A stretch of DNA of 63,863 nucleotides, filler included, from Octopus bimaculoides (Eukaryota): NCBI RefSeq assembly GCF_001194135.2. It is 6 parts of 6 records of this genome, joined end to end, with 100 filler letters (N's around TTAATTAATTAA, not from the genome) between each part and the next. Parts side by side here need not be neighbours in the genome. Positions count along the whole stretch, not along the records: positions 14,334 to 42,477 come from NC_068999.1; 5 more parts are not named here. The stretch is one strand, 5' to 3'. The translations under genes were made by a program, and so were the position numbers. Below are positions 14,334 to 39,300 of the stretch, one piece after another; the stretch's first letter is position 1; every line of letters starts with the position of its first letter. Below the pieces are notes generated by a model. The model searched no databases and was not told where the DNA came from. It worked only from the letters and a program-made list of their open reading frames with translations.

Positions 14334-16468
14334 TATATAACGGAACGCTGAACTCCAGACTATCAACTTAAACAACATTTATACAGGTGGTAAATATATA
14401 CATCTTTAGCTCTTGTTGTTACAGCTTCTGTGTGTATGAGCATAGTTGTTGGGACGTTGTTATGTAGATGTAAGCGAGCTGTCGAGCGTAAGTCCGAAAG
14501 ATGGAGAGTGACAGCTAAACACGTCCATGCTCATGGCTGGCCGACCGAGAAAGAGATAGAATAGAAGCGGGAACGTTTGCTTGTTTAATTCCACGCATGC
14601 GTGAGACTACGCATGCGCACGGCGTTACTACAGGGCTCCCTTGCCAGTGCGAAAACGCACGATAATATGAAATCTGTTAGAACGACTGAGGCAGGATGGC
14701 CACTGAAAACCACCCACAAGATGTAGCAAAAAAACACACACAAAGAAAAATTAAAGAAATGAAATGTACACTCGTGTGATACATGCATGCAATGTACAAA
14801 GTGAAGGAATGAAAGAAAAACATGCAATATGGGCAGTAAATGCCACCTAGTAAAAAACAAATGAGACAATGAGAAAACAAATCGTGATGACTACTGTCCA
14901 GGAACTGGAATCACGGAATGTGAAAGTCTGAGTGTTTGTTTTTACTGAAAGGAAAAAAAACGTATGAGTGCACAAGTGTGTGTGAGAAAAAAACACAGAA
15001 CATAGTAAAAGTGTCTGTAGAGAAAAAATCCAGTTCGTACAAGAATCCCACAAGGAGATAGAATGTCCGTACTCAGGAAGTCGTGGTCAGTTGTGACCGG
15101 TTACCTGGTACGGAATATTCTATGAAAGTTACACAAGGAAAATTTGGTCTGTTGATCGTGAGTGGAAACGTCCACTCTAACAGAGTCGACAAAACCGAGT
15201 GTGTTGGTATGGTGTGTCCCTGGTGGTGGGGTTGCTGGCGCACGACATTGTGGTAGACAGTACATTGATGGTGAAGACGTCGGCGCAGGAACTGTAATAT
15301 AGCTGTGTTCTGTATGTGTGGTGGTAATGATCTGTTGAAACTTGGTGACGTCGGGGGGAATGCTTGTAGTTGGTAGTAGTAATTGTTGTNNNNNNNNNNN
15401 NNNNNNNNNNNNNNNNNNNNNNNNNNNNNNNNNNNNNNNNNNNNNNNNNNNNNNNNNNNNNNNNNNNNNNNNNNNNNNNNNNNNNNNNNNNNNNNNNNNN
15501 NNNNNNNNNNNNNNNNNNNNNNNNNNNNNNNNNNNNNNNNNNNNNNNNNNNNNNNNNNNNNGAATGCGACATATAAGAACATAATAAAAAACAGGCCGTC
15601 TATATGTATGTGAGATATCACAGCAGAAAGAAAGTCAGAACACGTGAGAGTTTTATACCAAGTTTTTTTGAGTACACAATTTGAAAGTCGCAGGCTGTAA
15701 TTCTTGTCTGTTTATCGTGAGTGGAAACAGCCACTCTAACAGAGGCGAGATAAAAAACCGCGCTTGTTGATGTTGGTAATACGTAGTAAGTCGTGTTGAC
15801 TATGGTTGGAGATGTTGGTGGCGTAGTAATCGTAGAATCGTGTTGGTCATGACGATGATGCTGGTTAGTAGTTCAGTCTCCATGGCCGCATTTGTTCTTT
15901 AGTCCGGTTCACCAGTTATAAGTTGGTAGTCCAGAGTCTATGCTGCGTTTTTCTTCGTCGGAGTCACCACTTTATAGAAAGTGGGTTATTGCAGCTCAGC
16001 GGGCTGCGTGTTCGAATCACGTCGGGGTCACCAGTATAGGAAAGTTGGTTATACATCATTAGATGTACACCTGACTTTCCTATATAAAATTGGTTATATA
16101 ACGGAACGCTGAACTCCAGACTATCAACTTAAACAACATTTATACAGGTGGTAAATATATACAACTTTAGCTCTTGTTGTTACAGCTTCTGTGTGTATGA
16201 GCATAGTTGTTGGGACGTTGTTATGTAGATGTAAGCGAGCTGTCGAGCGTAAGTCCGAAAGATGGAGAGTGACAGCTAAACACGTCCATGCTCTATTGCT
16301 GGGCAGCAAGAAAGAGACTGTCTCCAGAGTTGGAAATGTTGGAGACACTGCTTGACACGTCCATGCTCATGGCCGGCCGACCGAGAAAGAGATAGAATAG
16401 AAGCGGGAACGTTTGCTTGTTTAATTCCACGCATGCGTGAGACTACGCATGCGCACGGTGTTACTACA
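14334..16468 (-). mobile_element. Small, apparently non-autonomous LTR retrotransposon with a tRNA-Trp PBS (CsRn1-like priming)
   Basis: Near-identical direct repeats at 14334-14632 and ~16091-16468, starting TGTAGTAAC on the minus strand. PBS TGGTGACCCCGACGTGAT at 16033-16016. Purine-rich GGCAAGGGAG just before the 3' LTR. No gag or pol is visible, but a gap lies at 15390-15561. Confidence 0.82.
16002..16033 (-). other. Primer-binding site complementary to the mature tRNA-Trp(CCA) 3' end
   Basis: Plus strand GGCTGCGTGTTCGAATCACGTCGGGGTCACCA equals the recalled 3' end of metazoan tRNA-Trp, including CCA. Confidence 0.88.
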
Positions 16469-16800
16469 ACTCTAAGACCCTTTGATTCTAATCCTTGCTT
16501 CCACACCTGAAATTTCTCCTCTAGTTCTGATAGTGACTCAGCAATTAGAGCAAGGTCATCAGCATAGAGGATCTCCCAGGGCATCCNNNNNNNNNNGATA
16601 GTGACTCAGCAATTAGAGCAAGGTCATCAGCATAGAGGATCTCCCAGGGCATCCTGTCTTGAATTCCTCTGTTATTGCCTGGAGGACTATGATAAATAGG
16701 GTGGGGCTGAGGACTGAACCTTGGTGGACCCCTACCTCTACCTGCAATTCTTCACTGTACTCGTCGCCAACCCTCATCTTACTGTGATGGTAGACCTGAA
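16469..16800 (-). mobile_element. RTE-clade LINE reverse-transcriptase fragment
   Basis: KMRVGDEYSEELQVEVGVHQGSVLSPTLFIIVLQAITEEF and ILYADDLALIAESLSELEEKFQVWKQGLESKGLRV; cut by the LTR element. Confidence 0.88.
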
Positions 16801-18480
16801 GGTGCAAGGCTGTTGAGGAATTCACAGGGTAATGAACAGCATCATTGGTGTGGAGCACAGTATCAATTGACTTGTATGTGCGACGATTGCCAGGCAGTTG
16901 TTCCGGAAGGTAATTGTTTACACCATCGACTGCGACATTTTTTGGTGCCAGAATTGCACATTTTCTCAGGCTACAATGGCCTGTGAATTGTATGTTCAGT
17001 TGGGGGAAAACTCTTGCCAAAAGTTTGGGTATATTTGACATCAAATTGCCAAAGGGTAAACTAATCTTCCCCTTCTGATCAACAATTACAGCACCATTTC
17101 CAATATCCATTAATTGCCTGCAGAAGTTCTCCATGTGCACATCACCACCTAACTGCACTATCATGTGTGAAACTCGTGCGAGTTTCAACTTTCTAACCTT
17201 GCTCCAAAGGTATGAAGATTTGATGCTCGCATACTTCATCTGCTCTCGTCCACTTTGGAATGACTGGGAGTGTTTGTCGAAAGTTGCCTGCAAGGAGTAC
17301 TGTTAGGCTGCCCATTAGCCTGGAGTTGCACCTCATATCTTGAAGTAATCTGTCAAGACCCTCAAAAACCCCCTTATAACTCATTGTCGCTTTGTCCCAA
17401 ATGATCAATTTGCACTCAGTGGACGACTTTGAGATCAGGCACCTCGTCCATCCTCTCCAGAGCGCATTTCAAGCTATTCACATAGGTATGAGTTGAATGA
17501 AGCATTGTCTGGCCCATTGTCTGTCACCTCCCATAAAATACACCAGGACAAATTTCGACTCTGCATCTGGTAATGGTCATAGCCCCCCCCCCACTCGAAT
17601 TTGAAAGTTGAAAATTGACTTTGTCGGGTGAACTGTTCCTCTGCACCGAATGATGTCATCATGAAGGATGCATTGTATTTCCATATTTTATGGCAGAAAT
17701 TGATACCATTGGGAGTGTTTTGTAGAAGAAGCTGCAGTAATACGTCTGGTGGATCTTGCAGTCTGTCCAGCCTCACACTGCCTTTGAATCAGCACGTAGG
17801 AGTCTCATTTGGCCATTTTAGAGCCTTGCAATAAGAACAAACAGTATTCATTTTGCCAATAGTCACTTGACGATTCATTGTGGGAATAATAAAGTTCACA
17901 CTCACTGATGGTCGCTTTCAGAGGTCCTATTATCGATTTTTTTCAACAATCTAAGTATGTCACGAGGTTTTCAGACATGAGTGCTACTCACGTGTCAAAT
18001 AAAGTATAAAAGTAATATTGTCTGCAAAAATTAGAAATTGAACACACCAAAAAAATCAATATTCAAAGTAAACGAACATAAAGAACGAAATGGGTTATTT
18101 CCCCCTTGAGTATTTACAAAAAATATTATGCAGATGCTATGGGTTATTTCCCTTGGGTGTTTTAAAAAAATTGGTTATAAGCGGTAGATAAAAAAGTCCC
18201 TACCAGGGGCCATATTGATTTTTTCAACAATCTAAGTATGTCACGAGGTTTCCAGACATGAGTTCTACTCACGTGTCAAGTTTCATCAAATCAATAAAAC
18301 GACGTAGGAGGAGTTAGTTAAAAACGCCACAAACACACACCGATTTTCCACATATGTATACATAAAATATACTTTATTTAAATAAAAAAGTTTCCTTAGT
18401 TAAAAACGCCACAAACACACACCGATTTTCCACATATATATACATAAAATATACTTTATTTAAATAAAAAAGTTTCCTCA
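16801..18480 (-). mobile_element. Internally deleted Helitron (Rep N-terminus joined to a PIF1 helicase fragment)
   Basis: KYNASFMMTSFGAEE..FSTFK (Rep N-terminal), IIWDKATMSYKGVFEGLDRLLQDMR..LLAGNFRQTLPVIP and EFLNSLAPSGLP (helicase). Duplicated 5'-terminal region similar to 41380-41536. Confidence 0.85.
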
Positions 18481-22717: not shown

Positions 22718-22753
<36 letters not shown>

Positions 22754-23028
22754 TTTATTTAAAAGCAGCAGAAATATAACAAAAGACTGTTACTCTGAGT
22801 TTCACGTTCCCGTTCATCGAACAGTTTTGTTAGAAATGGGAAAGGAATAACAATGCATTGTTATTCCTTTCCCATTTCTAACAAAACTGTCCGATGAACG
22901 GGAATGTGAAACTCAGAGTAACAGTCTTTTGTTATATTTTTGCTGCTTTTAAATAAAACATATTACTCTACCTCTGGTATTTGAGTACTCTTTTTTCCAC
23001 CTTGTTGCACATTTCATGTGCTTACACC

Positions 23029-23074: not shown

Positions 23075-23580
23075 CTAGCAGAGGTACCCAACATAGCCCA
23101 GTATAACTCTCAATGTAGTAGTTATTGGAATGAACTGAAACACTCCGTCAAGCATGACTATAGAAGTAACAGTTTACCGGTGTTTGCCCTAAAGAGGGCC
23201 TTTGAACGTTCACTATGAAATATCTCTGTGGAGATGCTGCCAGCAAAGATGAATCCGATGGTAACAATTTTATCTTGGTGGCCCTGAAGAGAGCCTTGGA
23301 TCATTCACTCTTAAAAGTCTCAATGGTGGTGCTGCCAGCAAAGACGAATCCAGTAATAACAATTTATAGTTGGTGGCCCTGAAGAGCATCTTTTAATGTT
23401 CACTTTGAATTATCTCAGCAGTGGTGCTTCCAGCAAAGATGAATCAGATTGTAACAATTTAAACTTGGTGGCCCTGAAGAGGCCCTGGATCGTTCACTCT
23501 TAAAAGTCCCAGCGGTAGACCTGTCAGCAAAGATGACTCCTATTAGAGGTGGTGGCCCTTAAGAAGTCCTTCACATCACT
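23075..23580 (-). mobile_element. Helitron-like 3' end carrying a 95-bp tandem array
   Basis: Minus strand ends ...GGGTACCTCTGCTAG^T (CTAG 23075-23078) after a decayed hairpin. Array units start at 23186, 23281, 23376, 23471 and 23555. Confidence 0.5.
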
Positions 23581-23764: not shown

Positions 23765-24290
23765 AGATAGGTGAATAAGGAGGGTGGGTAAGCAGGGGGT
23801 TCATGTCATTTTTAGTCAAAAACTGTCTCACACTCAAAGTGGTGTGTGTAGGTGCATTATCATGATGAAACAACCACTCTCTACTTTGCCACAGGTGGTG
23901 GCATTTTCATCTCATTGCATTGCAAAAATGCTTCAGAACTGCCAAGTAAAATGTCTTGACCAGGAGGAATAAATTCTGTGTGGACAATTTCTTTCACATC
24001 GATGAAACAAACCAGTATTGTCTTGACATTGGACTTCACTTGATGTGCTTTTTTGAGGCATGGTGACATTGAATGCTTCCATTGACTTGATTGCTGCTTC
24101 GTTTCCCAATTGTAGCCATAGTAGCAGCTTTCATCACTAGCGGTAACCTTCAAAATAAGGTTGGGATCAACTTCCAACTGTTCTTTCAGTTCATGACATG
24201 CATTCAGTCATGACCGCTATTGATCTTTTGTGAGCGAGCAAGGCATAAATTTTGTTGCAATTCTTTTCATTCATAATTCCTTGCTCAAAA
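23765..24290 (-). mobile_element. mariner (DD34D-type) transposase fragment
   Basis: VTASDESCYYGYNWETKQQSSQWKHSMSPCLKKAHQVKSNVKTILVCFIDVKEIVHTEFIPPG. Confidence 0.85.
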
Positions 24291-34879: not shown

Positions 34880-36128
34880 CAGGGACTGGAAACACCTTAA
34901 AATTTCAAACAAGTTTATTTTAATATGGGGTTGGACTGCCTTTGGCAGTAATTACATCTTGTATTCTATGAGGTATGGACTTATTGTTTCCAAAGGAATT
35001 TTTGTCCATTCTTCAGCTAAAACAGTCTCCAGTTCTTGTAGTGATGATGGTGGAGAATATTAACTCCTTACTTGTTTTTCTAAAATGCACCATAAAATGT
35101 TCAATAATATTGAGATCTGGGGTCTGTGGTGGCCAGATAAGATGTTCAACTTCACTAGAATGTTCCTCGTGCCATTCAGTAACAACTTTAGCCGTGTGAA
35201 TTGGTGCATTATCATCCTGAAAGATTGCGTTTCCCTCCAGAAACAGTTCTGCAACCGTAGGATGAATCTGATTAGATAAAATGCTTAAATAGTCTTGACT
35301 ATTAATTCTGCCATGAAGGAAAACTATTGGGTCAGCAGATTTCCAAGATAGAGCCCCCCAGATCATCACAAATCCTCCTCCATGTTTAACAGTTGGAAGA
35401 AGGCAGCCTGGGTCAAATGCTTCTTTTGGCTGTCTCCATATGTATACTCGGCTGGTGGTCGGAAATAGGGTAAAGGATGACTCGTCTGAGAAAATAACAT
35501 TCTTCCACTACTCCAGGGACCAATTCTGAAGGTTTTTACTCCACTCTAAATGCTCTGCAACACTTGTTTTTGAAAGCAGTAGTTTTCTGATTGCAACCCT
35601 CCTATGAAATCCAGCTTTGTGCAGCTCCTGGTGAACAGTTTTTGCAGAAACTTGGTTCTCGAGGTGGTCATTAAGCTTTGCAGTAATTTTGGGAGCTGTA
35701 CTTCTGTGATCATTTCTAACAATTCATGTAAGAGTCCAATGGTCCCTATTCGAAAGTTTTGGTTTTCTTCCGGAGTTTTGTTTTGATGAGGAGGTTTTTC
35801 CCTATTTCTCAAAGGCTGTCATTACTTTTGAGACAGTACTTCTTGATAAACCAAACATTTTGGCTGTTTTCATTATGCTAGTGCCTGCCATATGAGCACC
35901 AACAATTTGACCTCTTTGAAAGTCTGATAGATTTGTCATTTTAATGAATTTTAATTACCTTTTTCTGATGATATCTGAAAAGAAACATCAATTTTAGCAA
36001 AACATATCAAGCAACACTAATAATAAATAAAAAAACATAAAAATAAACAAGCTTTTGACAGTTTTATAGATATTTCAAAATTATGATGCTATGATGCTAG
36101 TTGTTTCCATTATTTTGTCCAATGCTTG
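34880..36128 (-). mobile_element. Tc1-family transposon, degraded
   Basis: TA-flanked. Transposase pieces MIWGALSW, FQDDNAPIHTAKVV and WPPQTPDLNIIEH. Right TIR gtttccattattttgtccaatgcttg; left TIR partly deleted. Confidence 0.88.
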
Positions 36129-36569: not shown

Positions 36570-36855
36570 CGAGGTCGTTGCCAGTGCCGCTGGACTGGCT
36601 CCTGTGCAGGTGGCACATAAAAACACCATTTGAGTGTGGCCGTTGCCAGTACTGCCTGATTGGCCCTCGTGCCGGTGGCACGTAAAAGCACCCACTACAC
36701 TCTTGGACTGGTTGGCATTAAGAAGGGCATCCAGCTGTAAAAACTCAGATCAGATTGGAGCCTGGTGCAGCTATCTGGTTTGCCAGTCCTCAGTCAAATC
36801 GTCCAACCCATGCCAGCATGGAGAGCGGACATTAAACGATGATGATGATGATGAA
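36570..36855 (+). mobile_element. RTE LINE 3' UTR fragment with (GAT)n tail
   Basis: Two GCCAGT..ACTGGC / GGTGGCACRTAAAA.CACC modules, then ggcattaagaagggcatccagctgta..ttaaacgatgatgatg. Confidence 0.8.
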
Positions 36856-36913
36856 TAAAGTGTGGTTCTGCAATCTAGAGGTTTAAGGGCATCTGTACTT
36901 TCTGCTGTGCATG

Positions 36914-37739: not shown

Positions 37740-38270
37740 ATTGACTACTGATTGAGACTTTTGGTAATACACCATGCATGAGAAGGCATGTTGGGCCAAA
37801 TGGAAACATAGTCATGGCTGATTCTGGCGTCATATAACTGCTACCTATGCTGGTGGCACGTAAAAAGCACCTTTTGAGACAATATGGCCGATGCTGGCGC
37901 TGCGTATCTAGCACCCTTGCTGGTGACGTGTGAAAAGCACCTTTTGAGCATTGGCCCTCACAGAGGCAATGACAAATGACTGAGACCTTTGGCAATATAC
38001 TGTGCTTGAGCAGAAGACCCATTAAGCCAAGTGAAATCGTAGTTGAGGCAGGTATGAGTGTTATGCAACTGACACCTATGCCAGTGGCATTTAAAAGCAC
38101 TCGTTACACTCTTAGAGTGATTGGTGTTAGGAAGGGTATCCAGCCGTAGAGACCATGCCAAATCAGACTGGAGTCTGGTGCAGCCTTTCAGCTTACCAGC
38201 CCTGGTCAAGCTGTCTAACCCATGCCAGCATGGACAATGGACATCAAATGATGATGGTGATGATGATGAT
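37740..38270 (+). mobile_element. RTE 3' end with a duplicated ORF terminus and UTR modules
   Basis: Two decayed copies of the DLWQY.VLE.KT..AK* coding end (~37755, ~37983), then a standard tail ending in (GAT)n. Confidence 0.6.
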
Positions 38271-38984
38271 ATGATGGTTTTCTTACATGTTCCATCTACA
38301 AATCTACTTGCAAACCTTTGGTTGGCTCAGGGCTACAATAGAAAATAGCTGCCAAAAGTGCCATGTAATGGGACTGAAACTGAAATGATGTTGGTGGAAA
38401 TTGAACTTCTCAACCACACAACCATGCTTGCACCTTTATACATATGTACAAATCCAAGCATTACACACACACACACACACAAATGCACACATATGCACAT
38501 GCATATGTATGTGTATATCATGTTTAGCAGAACACAATGGGTTTTGTTTAGGATCTCACTAGTAGAGGGAAACTGAAGTGACAACTGGAAAGGAGTGAGT
38601 GAGAAATCAAACTTAGGTGAGGGGAAAGTGAAAGAAATGAACTTAGTGAAAGGCTTTGCAATGGCTGGAGTAGCAGGCATTTTTACCAATGCAAATTTTT
38701 GTTTCAAATTTGTGAGAAATATAATTTCTCTTAATTTCATAGTTATATTAAAAATGAAACAAAGAAAAAAATTGAAAACAAAACACTACAAGTTGATTTT
38801 AATTGATGGAAGTTCACATACACATTCACCCAACACTCCAAGTGACAGCTGTTTCCTTGATGGAATGCTTTTCTTTGACAATTCCAATTAACAAAGCACA
38901 GTGCTGGTTGTTTTAGAAAAGACATATAAACAAAAGAATGAAAATAGGTTAATGTTTGATATCAGACACCCCACCACCATTCAT

Positions 38985-39300
38985 GCACCACATAAAAAGC
39001 ACCCATACTGGCACCTGCACTGGTGCCATGTATGAACACCTGTGCAGGTGCCACATATAAAGCATCTGTTCTGGTGTTATGCAAAAAGCATTCATGCTGG
39101 TGCCACATGAAAAGCATCCAGTGCACTCTGAAAAAGGATTGGCATTAGGAAAGGCATCCAACCACAGAAAACATGTCAAAACAGGCAACTGGAGCCTGGT
39201 TTAGCTCTCTGTCTTGCCAGCTCCTGTCAAATCATCCAACCCATGCTAGCATGGAAAATAGATGTTAAATGTTGATGATGATGATGATGACGATGATGAT
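38985..39300 (+). mobile_element. RTE-type 3' tail with an expanded short hairpin array
   Basis: About five ggtgccacat.aaaagca.c-like units, then ggcattaggaaaggcatccaacc..gatgatgatg. Confidence 0.7.

What the first reader, a model, noticed from the sequence alone, without database searches (positions are those of the whole stretch)
15895..16033. Over-long tRNA-Trp primer site followed by two degenerate tandem copies
A normal PBS is about 18 nt because m1A58 stops reverse transcription. Here the match to mature tRNA-Trp (with CCA) is 32 nt (16002-16033), and weaker similarity (cagctcagcg vs cagatcagaa) reaches the anticodon stem, i.e. most of a 3' tRNA half. Two decayed units follow on the element strand: TGGTGACTCCGACG..AAAAACGCAGC (starting 15969) and TGGTGAACCGGAC (starting 15914), spaced 64 and 55 nt. 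This could record repeated read-through capture of the primer, a multi-site primer trap, or a target or sponge for 3' tRNA fragments. tRNA-Trp priming is known for CsRn1-clade Gypsy elements; I do not know of a stacked, extended PBS in them.
Basis: partly seen in the sequence, partly recalled or inferred. Interest (0 to 1): 0.75.

Follow-up and report, generated by a model that had tools for sequence, protein, structure and literature searches.

The report
Over-long, triplicated tRNA-Trp primer site
A small non-coding LTR retrotransposon on the minus strand has a primer site matching 32 (loosely 42) bases of tRNA-Trp instead of the usual 18, followed by two old decayed copies of the same module; this is an unusual variant of a known mechanism, not a new kind of system.

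Summary
Window 16002-16033 is identical to the last 29 nt of real eukaryotic tRNA-Trp(CCA) genes plus CCA. Similarity continues to 42 nt with 3 mismatches.

Two further same-strand copies start at 15969 and 15914, spaced 64 and 55 nt, and are significantly homologous to the first. Each unit is about 19 nt of presumed LTR terminus plus the primer binding site (PBS) plus remnants of the extension. They are therefore duplications of a U5-end/PBS module, not independent tRNA captures.

The context is an LTR retrotransposon on the minus strand:
- 5' LTR at 16468-16036, starting TG
- 3' LTR at 14632-14334, cut by the piece edge and about 1% diverged
- a purine-rich tract before the 3' LTR
- no gag/pol in the visible 1.2 kb of internal sequence
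- insertion into a LINE RT fragment

The units are about 11-15% diverged, so they predate this insertion.

Extended Trp PBSs of 30-39 nt also occur in unrelated elements, including an autonomous Ty3/Gypsy. Retroviral Trp PBSs stop at exactly 18 nt. None of the five metagenome loci with an extended PBS has stacked copies.

CsRn1 membership cannot be tested. No other copy of this family could be retrieved, and the host's own tRNA-Trp was not available.

The parts
16036..16468 (-). 5' LTR, about 433 nt. It starts TGTAGTAAC at 16468. The 3' end is inferred to abut the PBS and reads ...CCTATAC.
   Evidence: Direct repeat with 14334-14632. The repeat ends exactly at ...GTTACTACA on the + strand in both copies. 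The last 59 nt (16094-16036) cannot be confirmed as LTR, because the other copy is cut by the piece edge.
14334..14632 (-). 3' LTR, truncated by the edge of the piece at 14334.
   Evidence: 3 mismatches over about 299 aligned nt against the 5' LTR, plus one 75-nt indel.
16002..16033 (-). PBS unit U1: an exact 32-nt complement of tRNA-Trp(CCA) positions 45-76, including CCA.
   Evidence: Predicted duplex energy with the tRNA 3' end is -36.5 kcal/mol for 18 nt and -69.9 for 32 nt.
15992..16001 (-). Degenerate continuation of the tRNA complement into the anticodon stem and loop (7/10 matches in register).
   Evidence: 42-nt alignment with 3 mismatches. Not significant on its own out of register.
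16035..16084 (-). Hairpin at the LTR end, immediately upstream of the PBS. Its 3' arm is the TATAACCAACTTTCCTATA motif that recurs before each PBS copy.
   Evidence: Inverted repeat I1, 23-nt arms, 83% complementary, 4-nt loop. Present in both the MFE and centroid folds. It also produced a spurious weak mir-5 hit.
16054..16100 (-). U0: an additional copy of the TATAACCAA-TTT-TATA motif inside the LTR, without a PBS-like part.
   Evidence: U0 vs U1 score 24, p = 0.0025. U0 vs U2 p = 0.003.
15930..15989 (-). Unit U2: ATAACCCACTTTCTATAAAG + TGGTGACTCCGACG + AAGAAAA + ACGCAGC + ...TCTGGA. The PBS-like part is 15942-15969.
   Evidence: U1 vs U2 z = 12.3. The unit body aligns to the tRNA complement as far as index 44, with 0 of 3000 shuffles reaching the score. 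Its single mismatch in the first 14 nt is C-to-U, which keeps a G.U pair. Predicted duplex energy is -27.3 kcal/mol.
15875..15929 (-). Unit U3: CTACCAACTTATAAC + TGGTGAACCGGAC + ...GAACAAATGCGGCC. The PBS-like part is 15902-15914.
   Evidence: U1 vs U3 z = 6.6 and U2 vs U3 z = 6.4. nhmmer profile E = 3.6e-11 (self-inclusive). Duplex energy is only -17.1 kcal/mol, about the 1st percentile of random windows.
16113..16131 (-). 5' arm of a predicted long-range stem in the LTR.
   Evidence: Inverted repeat I5, 19 nt, 84% complementary with 15919-15937. It forms in both the MFE and centroid folds of 16140-15870 (z = -3.7). Whether it lies inside the transcript is unknown, because the transcription start is not mapped.
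15919..15937 (-). 3' arm of the same long-range stem. It overlaps the end of U2 and the LTR-terminus-like motif of U3.
14633..14645 (-). Polypurine-tract-like sequence GGCAAGGGAG, followed by CCC, immediately upstream of the 3' LTR.
   Evidence: Read directly. It is short and only moderately purine-rich.
14633..16035 (-). Internal region, about 1.4 kb including an assembly gap of N at 15390-15561. No gag or pol is visible.
   Evidence: No long ORF. No Pfam family reached a significant score in any of the three minus-strand frames on either side of the gap.
16469..16760 (-). Flanking LINE-type reverse-transcriptase fragment, interrupted by the element at 16468/16469.
   Evidence: Weak RVT_1 matches. 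The reading frame stops at profile position 186/205, exactly at the LTR boundary.

Best explanation
The region is the 5' leader of a small, apparently non-autonomous LTR retrotransposon on the minus strand. It is inserted into a LINE fragment.

U1 (16033-16002) is the working primer binding site for mature tRNA-Trp(CCA). It pairs with every tRNA nucleotide 3' of the anticodon stem: CCA, discriminator, acceptor 3' strand, the whole T arm and most of the variable loop, 32 nt in all. The canonical PBS pairs with only the 18 nt that end at m1A58.

The most likely reason for the extra length (inferred) concerns plus-strand strong-stop synthesis. In this family the reverse transcriptase copies the attached tRNA past position 58. 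The primer may be hypomodified at A58, or the enzyme may read through. The stop falls near the base of the anticodon stem. The genome-encoded PBS has co-adapted to that longer copy, which also gives a much stronger primer duplex. An earlier ancestor carried a complement reaching the anticodon loop (42-44 nt). That distal part is no longer maintained and is decaying.

U2 and U3 are old tandem duplications of a module made of about 19 nt of LTR terminus plus the already-extended PBS. They were inherited through many transposition cycles and have decayed. U2 could still pair with the tRNA 3' end through 14 bp. U3 probably cannot. Part of U2/U3 may be kept because it forms the 3' arm of a stem that encloses the PBS.

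Shown: the anatomy, the tRNA match, the homology of the units, their age relative to the LTRs, and the existence of extended Trp PBSs elsewhere. Inferred: the read-through mechanism, which unit is used for priming, and any role for U2/U3.
For: LTR-element anatomy:
- Direct repeats 14334-14632 and 16095-16468, about 1% diverged and ending in TG on the element strand.
- A purine-rich tract before the 3' LTR.
- The PBS begins where the 5' LTR should end.
- The insertion cuts an RT reading frame.
- No coding capacity in the visible internal sequence.

tRNA match:
- 32/32 exact and 39/42 overall against ARAGORN-confirmed tRNA-Trp genes.
- The three mismatches all fall in the distal 10 of 42 positions (p about 0.01 for that clustering, my calculation). 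This fits a maintained proximal block and an unmaintained distal block.

Units:
- Highly significant mutual homology that includes the non-tRNA motif.
- U2 and U3 keep remnants of the extension, ACGCAGC and ATGCGGCC. The extension therefore predates the duplications.
- Substitution divergence between units is about 11-15% plus 4-5 indel events, against about 1% between the LTRs. The units therefore predate this insertion.

Comparative evidence:
- An autonomous Ty3/Gypsy (L028/L091: LTR pair, DUF7041 gag, RVT_1, RT_RNaseH_2, Integrase_H2C2) has the same 32-nt Trp PBS.
- Other loci have runs of 30, 33, 36, 37 and 39 nt.
- Nine retrovirus-type leaders in IMG/VR stop at exactly 18 nt.

Literature:
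- m1A58 is needed for the plus-strand strong stop. Lentiviral genomes keep complementarity up to a second stop at position 54 (PMC8599865). Co-adaptation of PBS length to the RT stop therefore has a precedent.

Duplex energies are given and the leader fold.
Against: - No second copy of this family could be retrieved. Conservation of the extension and of U2/U3 across the family is inferred, not observed.
- The host's own tRNA-Trp and its modification state are unknown.
- If RT read through a modified m1A58, misincorporation opposite position 58 would be expected. The base there is correct in the window and in every extended PBS seen. This favours an unmodified primer, inheritance through the RNA template, or plain selection for pairing rather than read-through of m1A.
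- The end points of the extended PBSs vary (30-39 nt), so there is no single sharp stop.
- The inner end of the LTR is not verified, and the presumed terminus (..TATAC) is not the canonical CA.
- The 172-N gap could hide more internal sequence.
- The stem arm at 16113-16131 may lie upstream of the transcription start.
Confidence: 0.6

Rival explanations
1. Alternative or back-up priming sites. tRNA-Trp can anneal to U2 (and perhaps U3) as well as to U1. Each site carries its own LTR-terminus-like motif just upstream. Priming at U2 would therefore give progeny whose LTRs are 64 nt longer, still end in an integrase-recognisable sequence, and have U2 'refreshed' to a perfect PBS. On this view U0, inside the LTR, would be a unit absorbed in that way earlier.
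For: - U2 keeps 14 contiguous pairs with the tRNA 3' end including CCA. Its one change is C-to-U, which preserves a G.U pair. Predicted dG is -27.3 kcal/mol, equal to the 0.1st percentile of random windows.
- Every PBS-like copy is preceded by the same motif that precedes the real PBS.
- A motif copy without a PBS sits inside the LTR (U0).
- Functional PBSs as short as 10 nt exist, as in Ty1 (PMC3592414).
Against: - U2 and U3 have clearly decayed, with indels inside the T-arm part. This would not be expected if they were regularly re-copied from the primer.
- U3 pairs no better than random sequence.
- None of the five other extended-PBS loci checked shows stacking.
- No long-LTR variant could be looked for.
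Confidence: 0.12
2. Priming by a 3' tRNA half or long 3' fragment rather than by the whole tRNA. A pre-cleaved, unfolded 3' half of tRNA-Trp (anticodon loop to CCA) anneals over its full length. It is copied to its 5' end by run-off, which sets the PBS length at about 38-44 nt.
For: - Similarity in U1 reaches tRNA position 35.
- U2 aligns to index 44, with TCTGGA being the complement of the anticodon loop.
- Other loci reach 36, 37 and 39 nt, ending in the 3' strand of the anticodon stem.
- Priming by tRNA fragments is established for copia and Ty5. This point is from my own knowledge and was not checked here.
Against: - The exact block stops at 32 nt, at the base of the anticodon stem, in the window and in L028/L091, not in the anticodon loop.
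- The distal similarity is weak and not significant out of register.
- End points vary between loci.
- There are no small-RNA data.
Confidence: 0.12
3. Target or sponge for 3' tRNA fragments. The long and repeated complementarity is there to bind 3' tRFs or halves. The effect would be host silencing of the element, or titration of inhibitory tRFs by the element.
For: - 3' tRFs are known to bind PBSs and block LTR-element reverse transcription (Schorn et al. 2017, as summarised in PMC7773854).
- Three sites in 130 nt and a 32-nt perfect match would bind such RNAs strongly.
Against: - An element gains nothing from being a better target.
- A sponge would need conserved, well-matched sites, but U2 and U3 are decayed.
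- There are no expression or small-RNA data.
- Any PBS is automatically a tRF target, so this adds no explanation for the architecture.
Confidence: 0.05
4. Not a PBS at all. Instead, a retro-inserted tRNA-Trp 3' fragment (a 'tailless retropseudogene' or SINE-like sequence) that was then locally duplicated and happens to lie beside a repeat.
For: - The fragment carries CCA and covers a 3' tRNA half, as such retrocopies do.
- Similar CCA-bearing Trp fragments occur in contigs where no LTR element could be recognised (L124).
Against: - It sits exactly where the inner end of the 5' LTR should be, in the orientation required for priming.
- A purine tract lies at the matching place before the other LTR.
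- The same arrangement occurs in a complete Ty3/Gypsy.
- There is no tRNA-like head or full cloverleaf.
Confidence: 0.05

Closest known systems
CsRn1-clade and other tRNA-Trp-primed Ty3/Gypsy retrotransposons (CsRn1, PwRn1, Boudicca, GyRex2)
   Same: PBS complementary to the 3' end of tRNA-Trp, directly after the 5' LTR (PMC3630058, PMC2582038, PMC3587641).
   Different: The one PBS sequence quoted in the papers read is 16 nt (GyRex2: TGGTGACCCTGAAGTA, PMC3587641). Here the match is 32 nt exact. This element has no gag or pol, so the clade-defining CHCC Gag and GPY integrase motifs cannot be assessed. No stacked copies are described for these elements in the papers read.
Retroviral tRNA-Trp primer site with U5 hairpin and U5-leader stem (avian retrovirus type)
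   Same: Same primer and same first 18 nt. A hairpin lies just upstream in U5, and a predicted long-range stem brackets the PBS.
   Different: In nine IMG/VR contigs, whose leader layout I take to be the avian retrovirus type (they were not otherwise annotated), the match to the tRNA stops at exactly 18 nt. Here it continues for 14 more exact nt. The further tRNA contacts reported for retroviruses are short and non-contiguous (own knowledge).
Lentiviral complementarity up to the second RT stop (m5Um54)
   Same: The genome keeps complementarity to the primer beyond 18 nt, matched to where RT can stop on the tRNA (PMC8599865).
   Different: That extension is only about 4 nt, to position 55. Here it crosses the whole T arm and variable loop to position 45.
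Ty1 'extended PBS' (10-nt PBS plus boxes 0, 1 and 2.1)
   Same: Extra genome-tRNA pairing outside the core PBS, involving the T and D arms, helps priming (PMC3592414).
   Different: In Ty1 the contacts are separate short boxes. Here there is one continuous duplex.
Non-autonomous LTR elements (TRIM / LARD)
   Same: LTRs, PBS and PPT without coding capacity. Presumably mobilised in trans.
   Different: Its size of about 2.2 kb lies between the usual TRIM and LARD ranges. The partner element is unknown.
Tandem repeats in the untranslated regions of LTR retrotransposons
   Same: Short tandem arrays next to the LTR are common in LTR elements (own knowledge).
   Different: Here the repeated unit spans the LTR/PBS junction and contains the primer site itself.

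Membership tests
LTR retrotransposon (generic) | Two long direct terminal repeats | tested here: met
   14334-14632 and 16095-16468 have 3 mismatches in about 299 nt plus one 75-nt indel. One repeat is cut by the piece edge.
LTR retrotransposon (generic) | LTR termini 5'-TG...CA-3' | tested here: inconclusive
   Both copies start TGTAGTAAC. The inner end is inferred only from the PBS position and reads ..CCTATAC, not CA.
LTR retrotransposon (generic) | PBS complementary to a tRNA 3' end (with CCA) next to the 5' LTR | tested here: met
LTR retrotransposon (generic) | Polypurine tract just upstream of the 3' LTR | tested here: met
   GGCAAGGGAG, 3 nt before the LTR start. It is short.
LTR retrotransposon (generic) | Target-site duplication | not testable with these tools
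   The outer end of the 3' LTR lies outside the piece, and the source locus could not be retrieved.
Autonomous Ty3/Gypsy | gag and pol (PR-RT-RH-IN) reading frames | tested here: not met
   No long ORF and no significant Pfam hit in the visible internal sequence. A 172-N gap remains.
CsRn1 clade | tRNA-Trp PBS | tested here: met
   The clade definition is from PMC3630058 and PMC2582038.
CsRn1 clade | CHCC Gag motif and GPY motif in integrase | tested here: not met
   No gag or integrase is present in this copy. The partner element is unknown.
CsRn1 clade | 4-bp target-site duplication | not testable with these tools
   One flank lies outside the piece.
Canonical PBS | Complementarity ends 18 nt from the tRNA 3' end, at m1A58 | tested here: not met
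   The exact run is 32 nt. The control retroviral leaders have a run of 18.
tRNA gene, tRNA-derived SINE or tRNA retro-pseudogene | Cloverleaf or tRNA-like head with internal promoter boxes | tested here: not met
   ARAGORN finds no tRNA in the piece. There is no Rfam tRNA hit in 15700-16300 even at E up to 10. Only the 3' 42 nt are tRNA-like.
TRIM / LARD non-autonomous LTR elements | LTR-PBS-PPT-LTR without coding capacity | tested here: met
   The size class is intermediate, and the gap caveat applies.

The most novel reading that the evidence does not exclude
Over-long tRNA-Trp primer sites of 30-40 nt may be a widespread, unrecognised class among invertebrate LTR elements. That would mean the m1A58 'strong stop' rule does not hold for their primer or RT. 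Either the primer is tRNA-Trp unmodified at A58, or it is a 3' tRNA half, and it is copied to the base of, or into, the anticodon stem.

In this family the module of LTR terminus plus PBS has multiplied. Priming can then shift between units, which moves the LTR boundary by one unit and produces LTR-length variants.
Probability: 0.2. Interest if true: 0.7.

Novelty: new variant of a known kind. Interest (0 to 1): 0.45.

Why it matters
The 18-nt length of retroelement primer sites is normally explained by the m1A58 block on the tRNA.

A perfectly kept 32-nt site, found again in an unrelated autonomous Ty3/Gypsy and in several other contigs, suggests a different rule for some invertebrate elements. 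Their stop may lie at the base of the anticodon stem, or they may use a differently modified or cleaved primer.

This can be tested by sequencing reverse-transcription intermediates and by mapping tRNA-Trp modifications. It also bears on how strongly 3' tRNA fragments could target such elements.

The stacked decayed copies matter less. They show that a module spanning the LTR/PBS junction can duplicate and persist. They also make a checkable prediction: family members whose LTRs are one unit longer.

Tried and rejected
1. Retrieving the source locus or other family copies. Exact look-ups of four window ORFs found nothing. A homology search with eight concatenated ORF translations from the LTR, leader and internal region gave no hit at E <= 0.001. 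blastn of the element against the rest of the piece found no other copy. Family-level conservation could therefore not be tested.

2. Rfam search of 15700-16300 at E up to 10. There was no tRNA hit, only chance-level mir-5 and snoRNA matches caused by the U5 hairpin.

3. Looking for more units. An nhmmer profile built from U1-U3 finds nothing else in the piece; the next best hit has E = 2.3. By eye, CCCCGACGT at 15356-15348 and CCGACGTC..CACCA at about 15283-15262 looked like further decayed units, but they are not significant (score 18, within the null range). I dropped them.

4. Extension of U2 and U3 tails into the anticodon region. This is suggestive in register (TCTGGA, TGGAG) but not significant alone (p = 0.14-0.29).

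5. L030 and L070 share an LTR end but differ at PBS position 30. I considered this as evidence for re-copying from different tRNA isodecoders. I rejected it as too weak, because the two sequences diverge completely from that point on.

6. L124 (39-nt run). No Pfam domain and no LTR pair could be found, so it is counted only as 'PBS-like'.

7. Literature searches for stacked or multiple PBSs and for 'extended PBS' returned nothing relevant beyond Ty1 and lentiviruses. One search was swamped because 'PBS' also means phosphate-buffered saline.

8. From the retrovirus-type IMG/VR contigs I read only 45 nt at the primer site and nothing more.
Full report
**What is in the sequence**

The + strand at 16002-16033 reads ggctgcgtgttcgaatcacgtcggggtcacca. 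That is tRNA sense ending in CCA. On the minus strand it reads TGGTGACCCCGACGTGATTCGAACACGCAGCC.

To test it against real genes rather than memory, I scanned metagenome contigs with the 25 nt that cover the T arm and acceptor strand. About 100 hits were complete genes reading GACTCCGTGGCGCAACGGTAGCGCGTCTGACTCCAGATCAGAAGG[C/T]TGCGTGTTCGAATCACGTCGGGGTCA. ARAGORN calls them tRNA-Trp(cca).

The GGCT variant plus CCA matches the window over 32 of 32 nt. The best local alignment runs 42 nt with three mismatches, all in the distal ten positions (score 69; best null score 16.8 +/- 2.0). The 18-mer occurs once in the window, with none expected.

The reference genes are not from the host species, which I could not reach.

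**The stacked copies**

TGGTGACCCCGAC with at most two mismatches occurs three times in the whole 42.5 kb. All three are on the minus strand, at 16033, 15969 and 15914, against 0.19 expected. Spacings are 64 and 55 nt.

Read on the element strand, the units are:
- U1: TATAACCAACTTTCCTATAC-TGGTGACCCCGACGTGATTCGAACACGCAGCCCGCTGAGCTGCA
- U2: ATAACCCACTTTCTATAAAG-TGGTGACTCCGACGAAGAAAAACGCAGCATAGACTCTGGA
- U3: CTACCAACTTATAAC-TGGTGAACCGGACTAAAGAACAAATGCGGCC...

Pairwise alignments give z = 12.3 (U1/U2), 6.6 (U1/U3) and 6.4 (U2/U3), with no shuffle reaching the observed score. Two points follow.

First, each unit includes about 15-20 nt that is not tRNA-derived and matches the sequence just upstream of the real PBS. 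A further copy of that motif (U0) lies inside the LTR (p = 0.0025).

Second, U2 and U3 keep remnants of the part beyond nt 18 (ACGCAGC, ATGCGGCC). The PBS was therefore already over-long when the module duplicated.

A profile built from the three units finds no fourth unit in the piece. Tandem Repeats Finder misses the array.

**Context**

A direct repeat joins 14334-14632 to 16095-16468. The two copies differ by 3 mismatches in about 299 nt and by one 75-nt indel bounded by a 14-nt repeat.

On the + strand both copies end in ...GTTACTACA and then diverge. On the minus strand each therefore begins TGTAGTAAC. The left copy is cut by the edge of the piece.

On the minus strand the order is:
- 5' LTR, 16468 to about 16036
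- PBS at 16033
- about 1.4 kb of internal sequence, with an N gap at 15390-15561
- GGCAAGGGAG-CCC
- 3' LTR from 14632

The visible internal sequence has no long ORF and no significant Pfam hit in any minus-strand frame.

Outside the 5' LTR, a LINE-type RT reading frame stops exactly at the boundary (RVT_1 profile position 186 of 205). PIF1-helicase fragments lie beyond it.

This is therefore a recently inserted, apparently non-autonomous LTR retrotransposon nested among other transposon debris. The last 59 nt of the LTR and the target-site duplication cannot be verified from this piece.

**Age argument**

The LTRs differ by about 1%. U1 and U2 differ by about 11% in substitutions plus four indel events, and U1 and U3 by about 15% plus five. 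The duplications are therefore much older than this insertion and must have been carried by the lineage. That argues against 'unique to this copy', although I could not see another copy.

**Is an over-long Trp PBS unusual?**

Control: nine IMG/VR contigs carry the same 18-mer, several of them at position 102. I take these to be retrovirus-type leaders; I did not annotate them further. In all nine the match to the tRNA stops at exactly 18 nt (only 45 nt were read from each). None of the IMG/VR contigs contains the 25-nt T-arm stretch.

Extended cases: five metagenome hits were not tRNA genes but CCA-bearing complements in retroelement-like settings:
- L028 and L091: 32 nt. Both have an LTR pair about 4.9 kb apart, a DUF7041 gag starting about 90 nt downstream, RVT_1, RT_RNaseH_2 and Integrase_H2C2. 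This is an autonomous Ty3/Gypsy.
- L030: 37 nt.
- L039: 36 nt.
- L070: 30 nt.

A scan of prokaryote assemblies with the bare 18-mer is unbiased with respect to extension. It gave mostly chance or coding hits, plus alphaproteobacterial tRNA genes. It also gave a handful of contaminant-like PBS hits with runs of 18, 18, 20, 33 and 39 nt.

Extended Trp primer sites therefore recur in unrelated elements. None of the five metagenome loci has extra PBS-like copies.

In the papers I could search, the one Trp PBS sequence quoted is 16 nt (GyRex2, PMC3587641). The CsRn1-clade papers state only that the PBS is for tRNA-Trp, without giving a length in the text read (PMC3630058, PMC2582038). The only 'extended' cases found were the separate boxes of Ty1 (PMC3592414) and the four extra nucleotides in lentiviruses that reach a second RT stop at position 54 (PMC8599865).

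**How it most likely works**

Thirty-two nucleotides from the 3' end is tRNA position 45. That covers everything 3' of the anticodon stem. The window and L028/L091 end there, and L142 ends one nt further on. The others intrude 4-7 nt into the anticodon stem.

During plus-strand strong-stop synthesis the RT copies the primer that is still attached to minus-strand DNA, and the copy must then pair with the genome-derived PBS. I infer that in these elements the copy regularly runs past position 58 and ends near the base of the still-folded anticodon stem. The primer may lack m1A58, or the RT may read through. The genome-encoded PBS would then have co-adapted to that length, as proposed on a smaller scale for lentiviruses (PMC8599865).

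The perfect 32-nt block next to a 10-nt block with 30% mismatches fits a maintained segment beside an unmaintained one (p about 0.01 for all three mismatches falling distally, my calculation). The predicted duplex energy rises from -36.5 kcal/mol (18 nt) to -69.9 (32 nt). That could help a non-autonomous element compete for primer.

Against simple read-through of a modified base: the nucleotide opposite A58 is correct in every case.

**U2 and U3**

U2 still offers 14 contiguous pairs to the tRNA 3' end. Its one change, C to U, keeps a G.U pair, and the predicted energy is -27.3 kcal/mol. U3 is no better than random sequence (-17.1, against a 1st percentile of -16.6).

The leader RNA (16140-15870) folds better than shuffles (z = -3.7). 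The fold contains a hairpin at the LTR end and a 19-bp long-range stem, 16131-16113 with 15937-15919, that encloses U1 and U2. Its 3' arm is made of the U2/U3 junction, which may explain why that part persists. Whether the 5' arm is transcribed is unknown.

My best reading is that U2 and U3 are relics of old tandem duplication of a module made of LTR end plus PBS, with at most a structural or occasional back-up role.

The more interesting alternative is that priming can shift to U2 and move the LTR boundary by one unit. It is not excluded, and it makes a clear prediction for other family copies.

**Verdict**

The units are module duplications, not repeated captures of the primer. CsRn1 membership cannot be tested.

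This is a new variant of a known kind, of moderate interest. That interest comes mainly from the recurring 30-39-nt Trp primer sites, which question the generality of the m1A58 stop.

Noticed in passing
window 16280-16354: There is a 75-nt segment in the 5' LTR copy that is absent from the 3' LTR copy. It is bounded by a 14-nt direct repeat (acacgtccatgctc). This looks like a slippage deletion or duplication that arose after, or during, transposition.
   Followed up: partly
window 15123-15206 and 15682-15769: An internal block of about 72-85 nt is repeated at 78-81% identity on either side of the N gap. Each copy contains a small hairpin, GAGTGGAAAC..CCACTC. The internal region may be built of larger repeats of about 560 nt, which could explain the assembly gap.
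   Followed up: partly
window 15390-15561: A run of 172 N (assembly gap) lies inside the element. Its true size is unknown, so the length and coding status of the internal region are provisional.
   Followed up: no
window 16469-17776: This stretch holds nested transposon debris on the minus strand. A LINE-type RT fragment is cut by the LTR element, and it is fused or adjacent to PIF1-like helicase (Helitron-type) fragments.
   Followed up: partly
window 22748-22963: There is a near-perfect palindrome: two 108-nt arms, 95% complementary, with no spacer, flanked by AT dinucleotide runs.
   Followed up: no
window 23186-23540: There is a 95-nt tandem repeat of 3.7 copies, with 73% matches.
   Followed up: no
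window 18314-18478: There is an 82-nt tandem duplication of 2 copies at 98% identity.
   Followed up: no
window 35013-35369 and 23881-24177: Two ORF fragments look like Tc1/mariner-type transposase C-terminal parts. This is judged by eye from the translations and was not checked against Pfam.
   Followed up: no
window 36793-36867, 38205-38279, 39226-39300: There are three dispersed copies (76-79% identity) of a roughly 75-nt motif, GTCAA..CCAACCCATGCCAGCATGGA..., followed by GAT/ATG triplet runs. It is probably a short interspersed repeat family.
   Followed up: no
L003 and L005 (metagenome contigs): These contigs carry very dense tRNA gene clusters: 19-20 tRNA genes in 2.6-3.3 kb, including tRNA-Trp.
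   Followed up: no
L051 and L086: A tRNA-Trp 3' half (positions 45-73, no CCA) is followed by a T run like a pol III terminator, but it is joined upstream to unrelated sequence. ARAGORN, run on L051 only, calls no tRNA gene there. It could be a split or rearranged tRNA gene, or a tRNA-derived repeat.
   Followed up: no
L114, L117-L119, L125, L129, L137 (prokaryote assemblies): Probable bacterial tRNA genes with encoded CCA, several of them in alphaproteobacterial assemblies. They share their last 25-27 nt with eukaryotic tRNA-Trp. A PBS-style search therefore picks them up as false 'extended' matches.
   Followed up: partly
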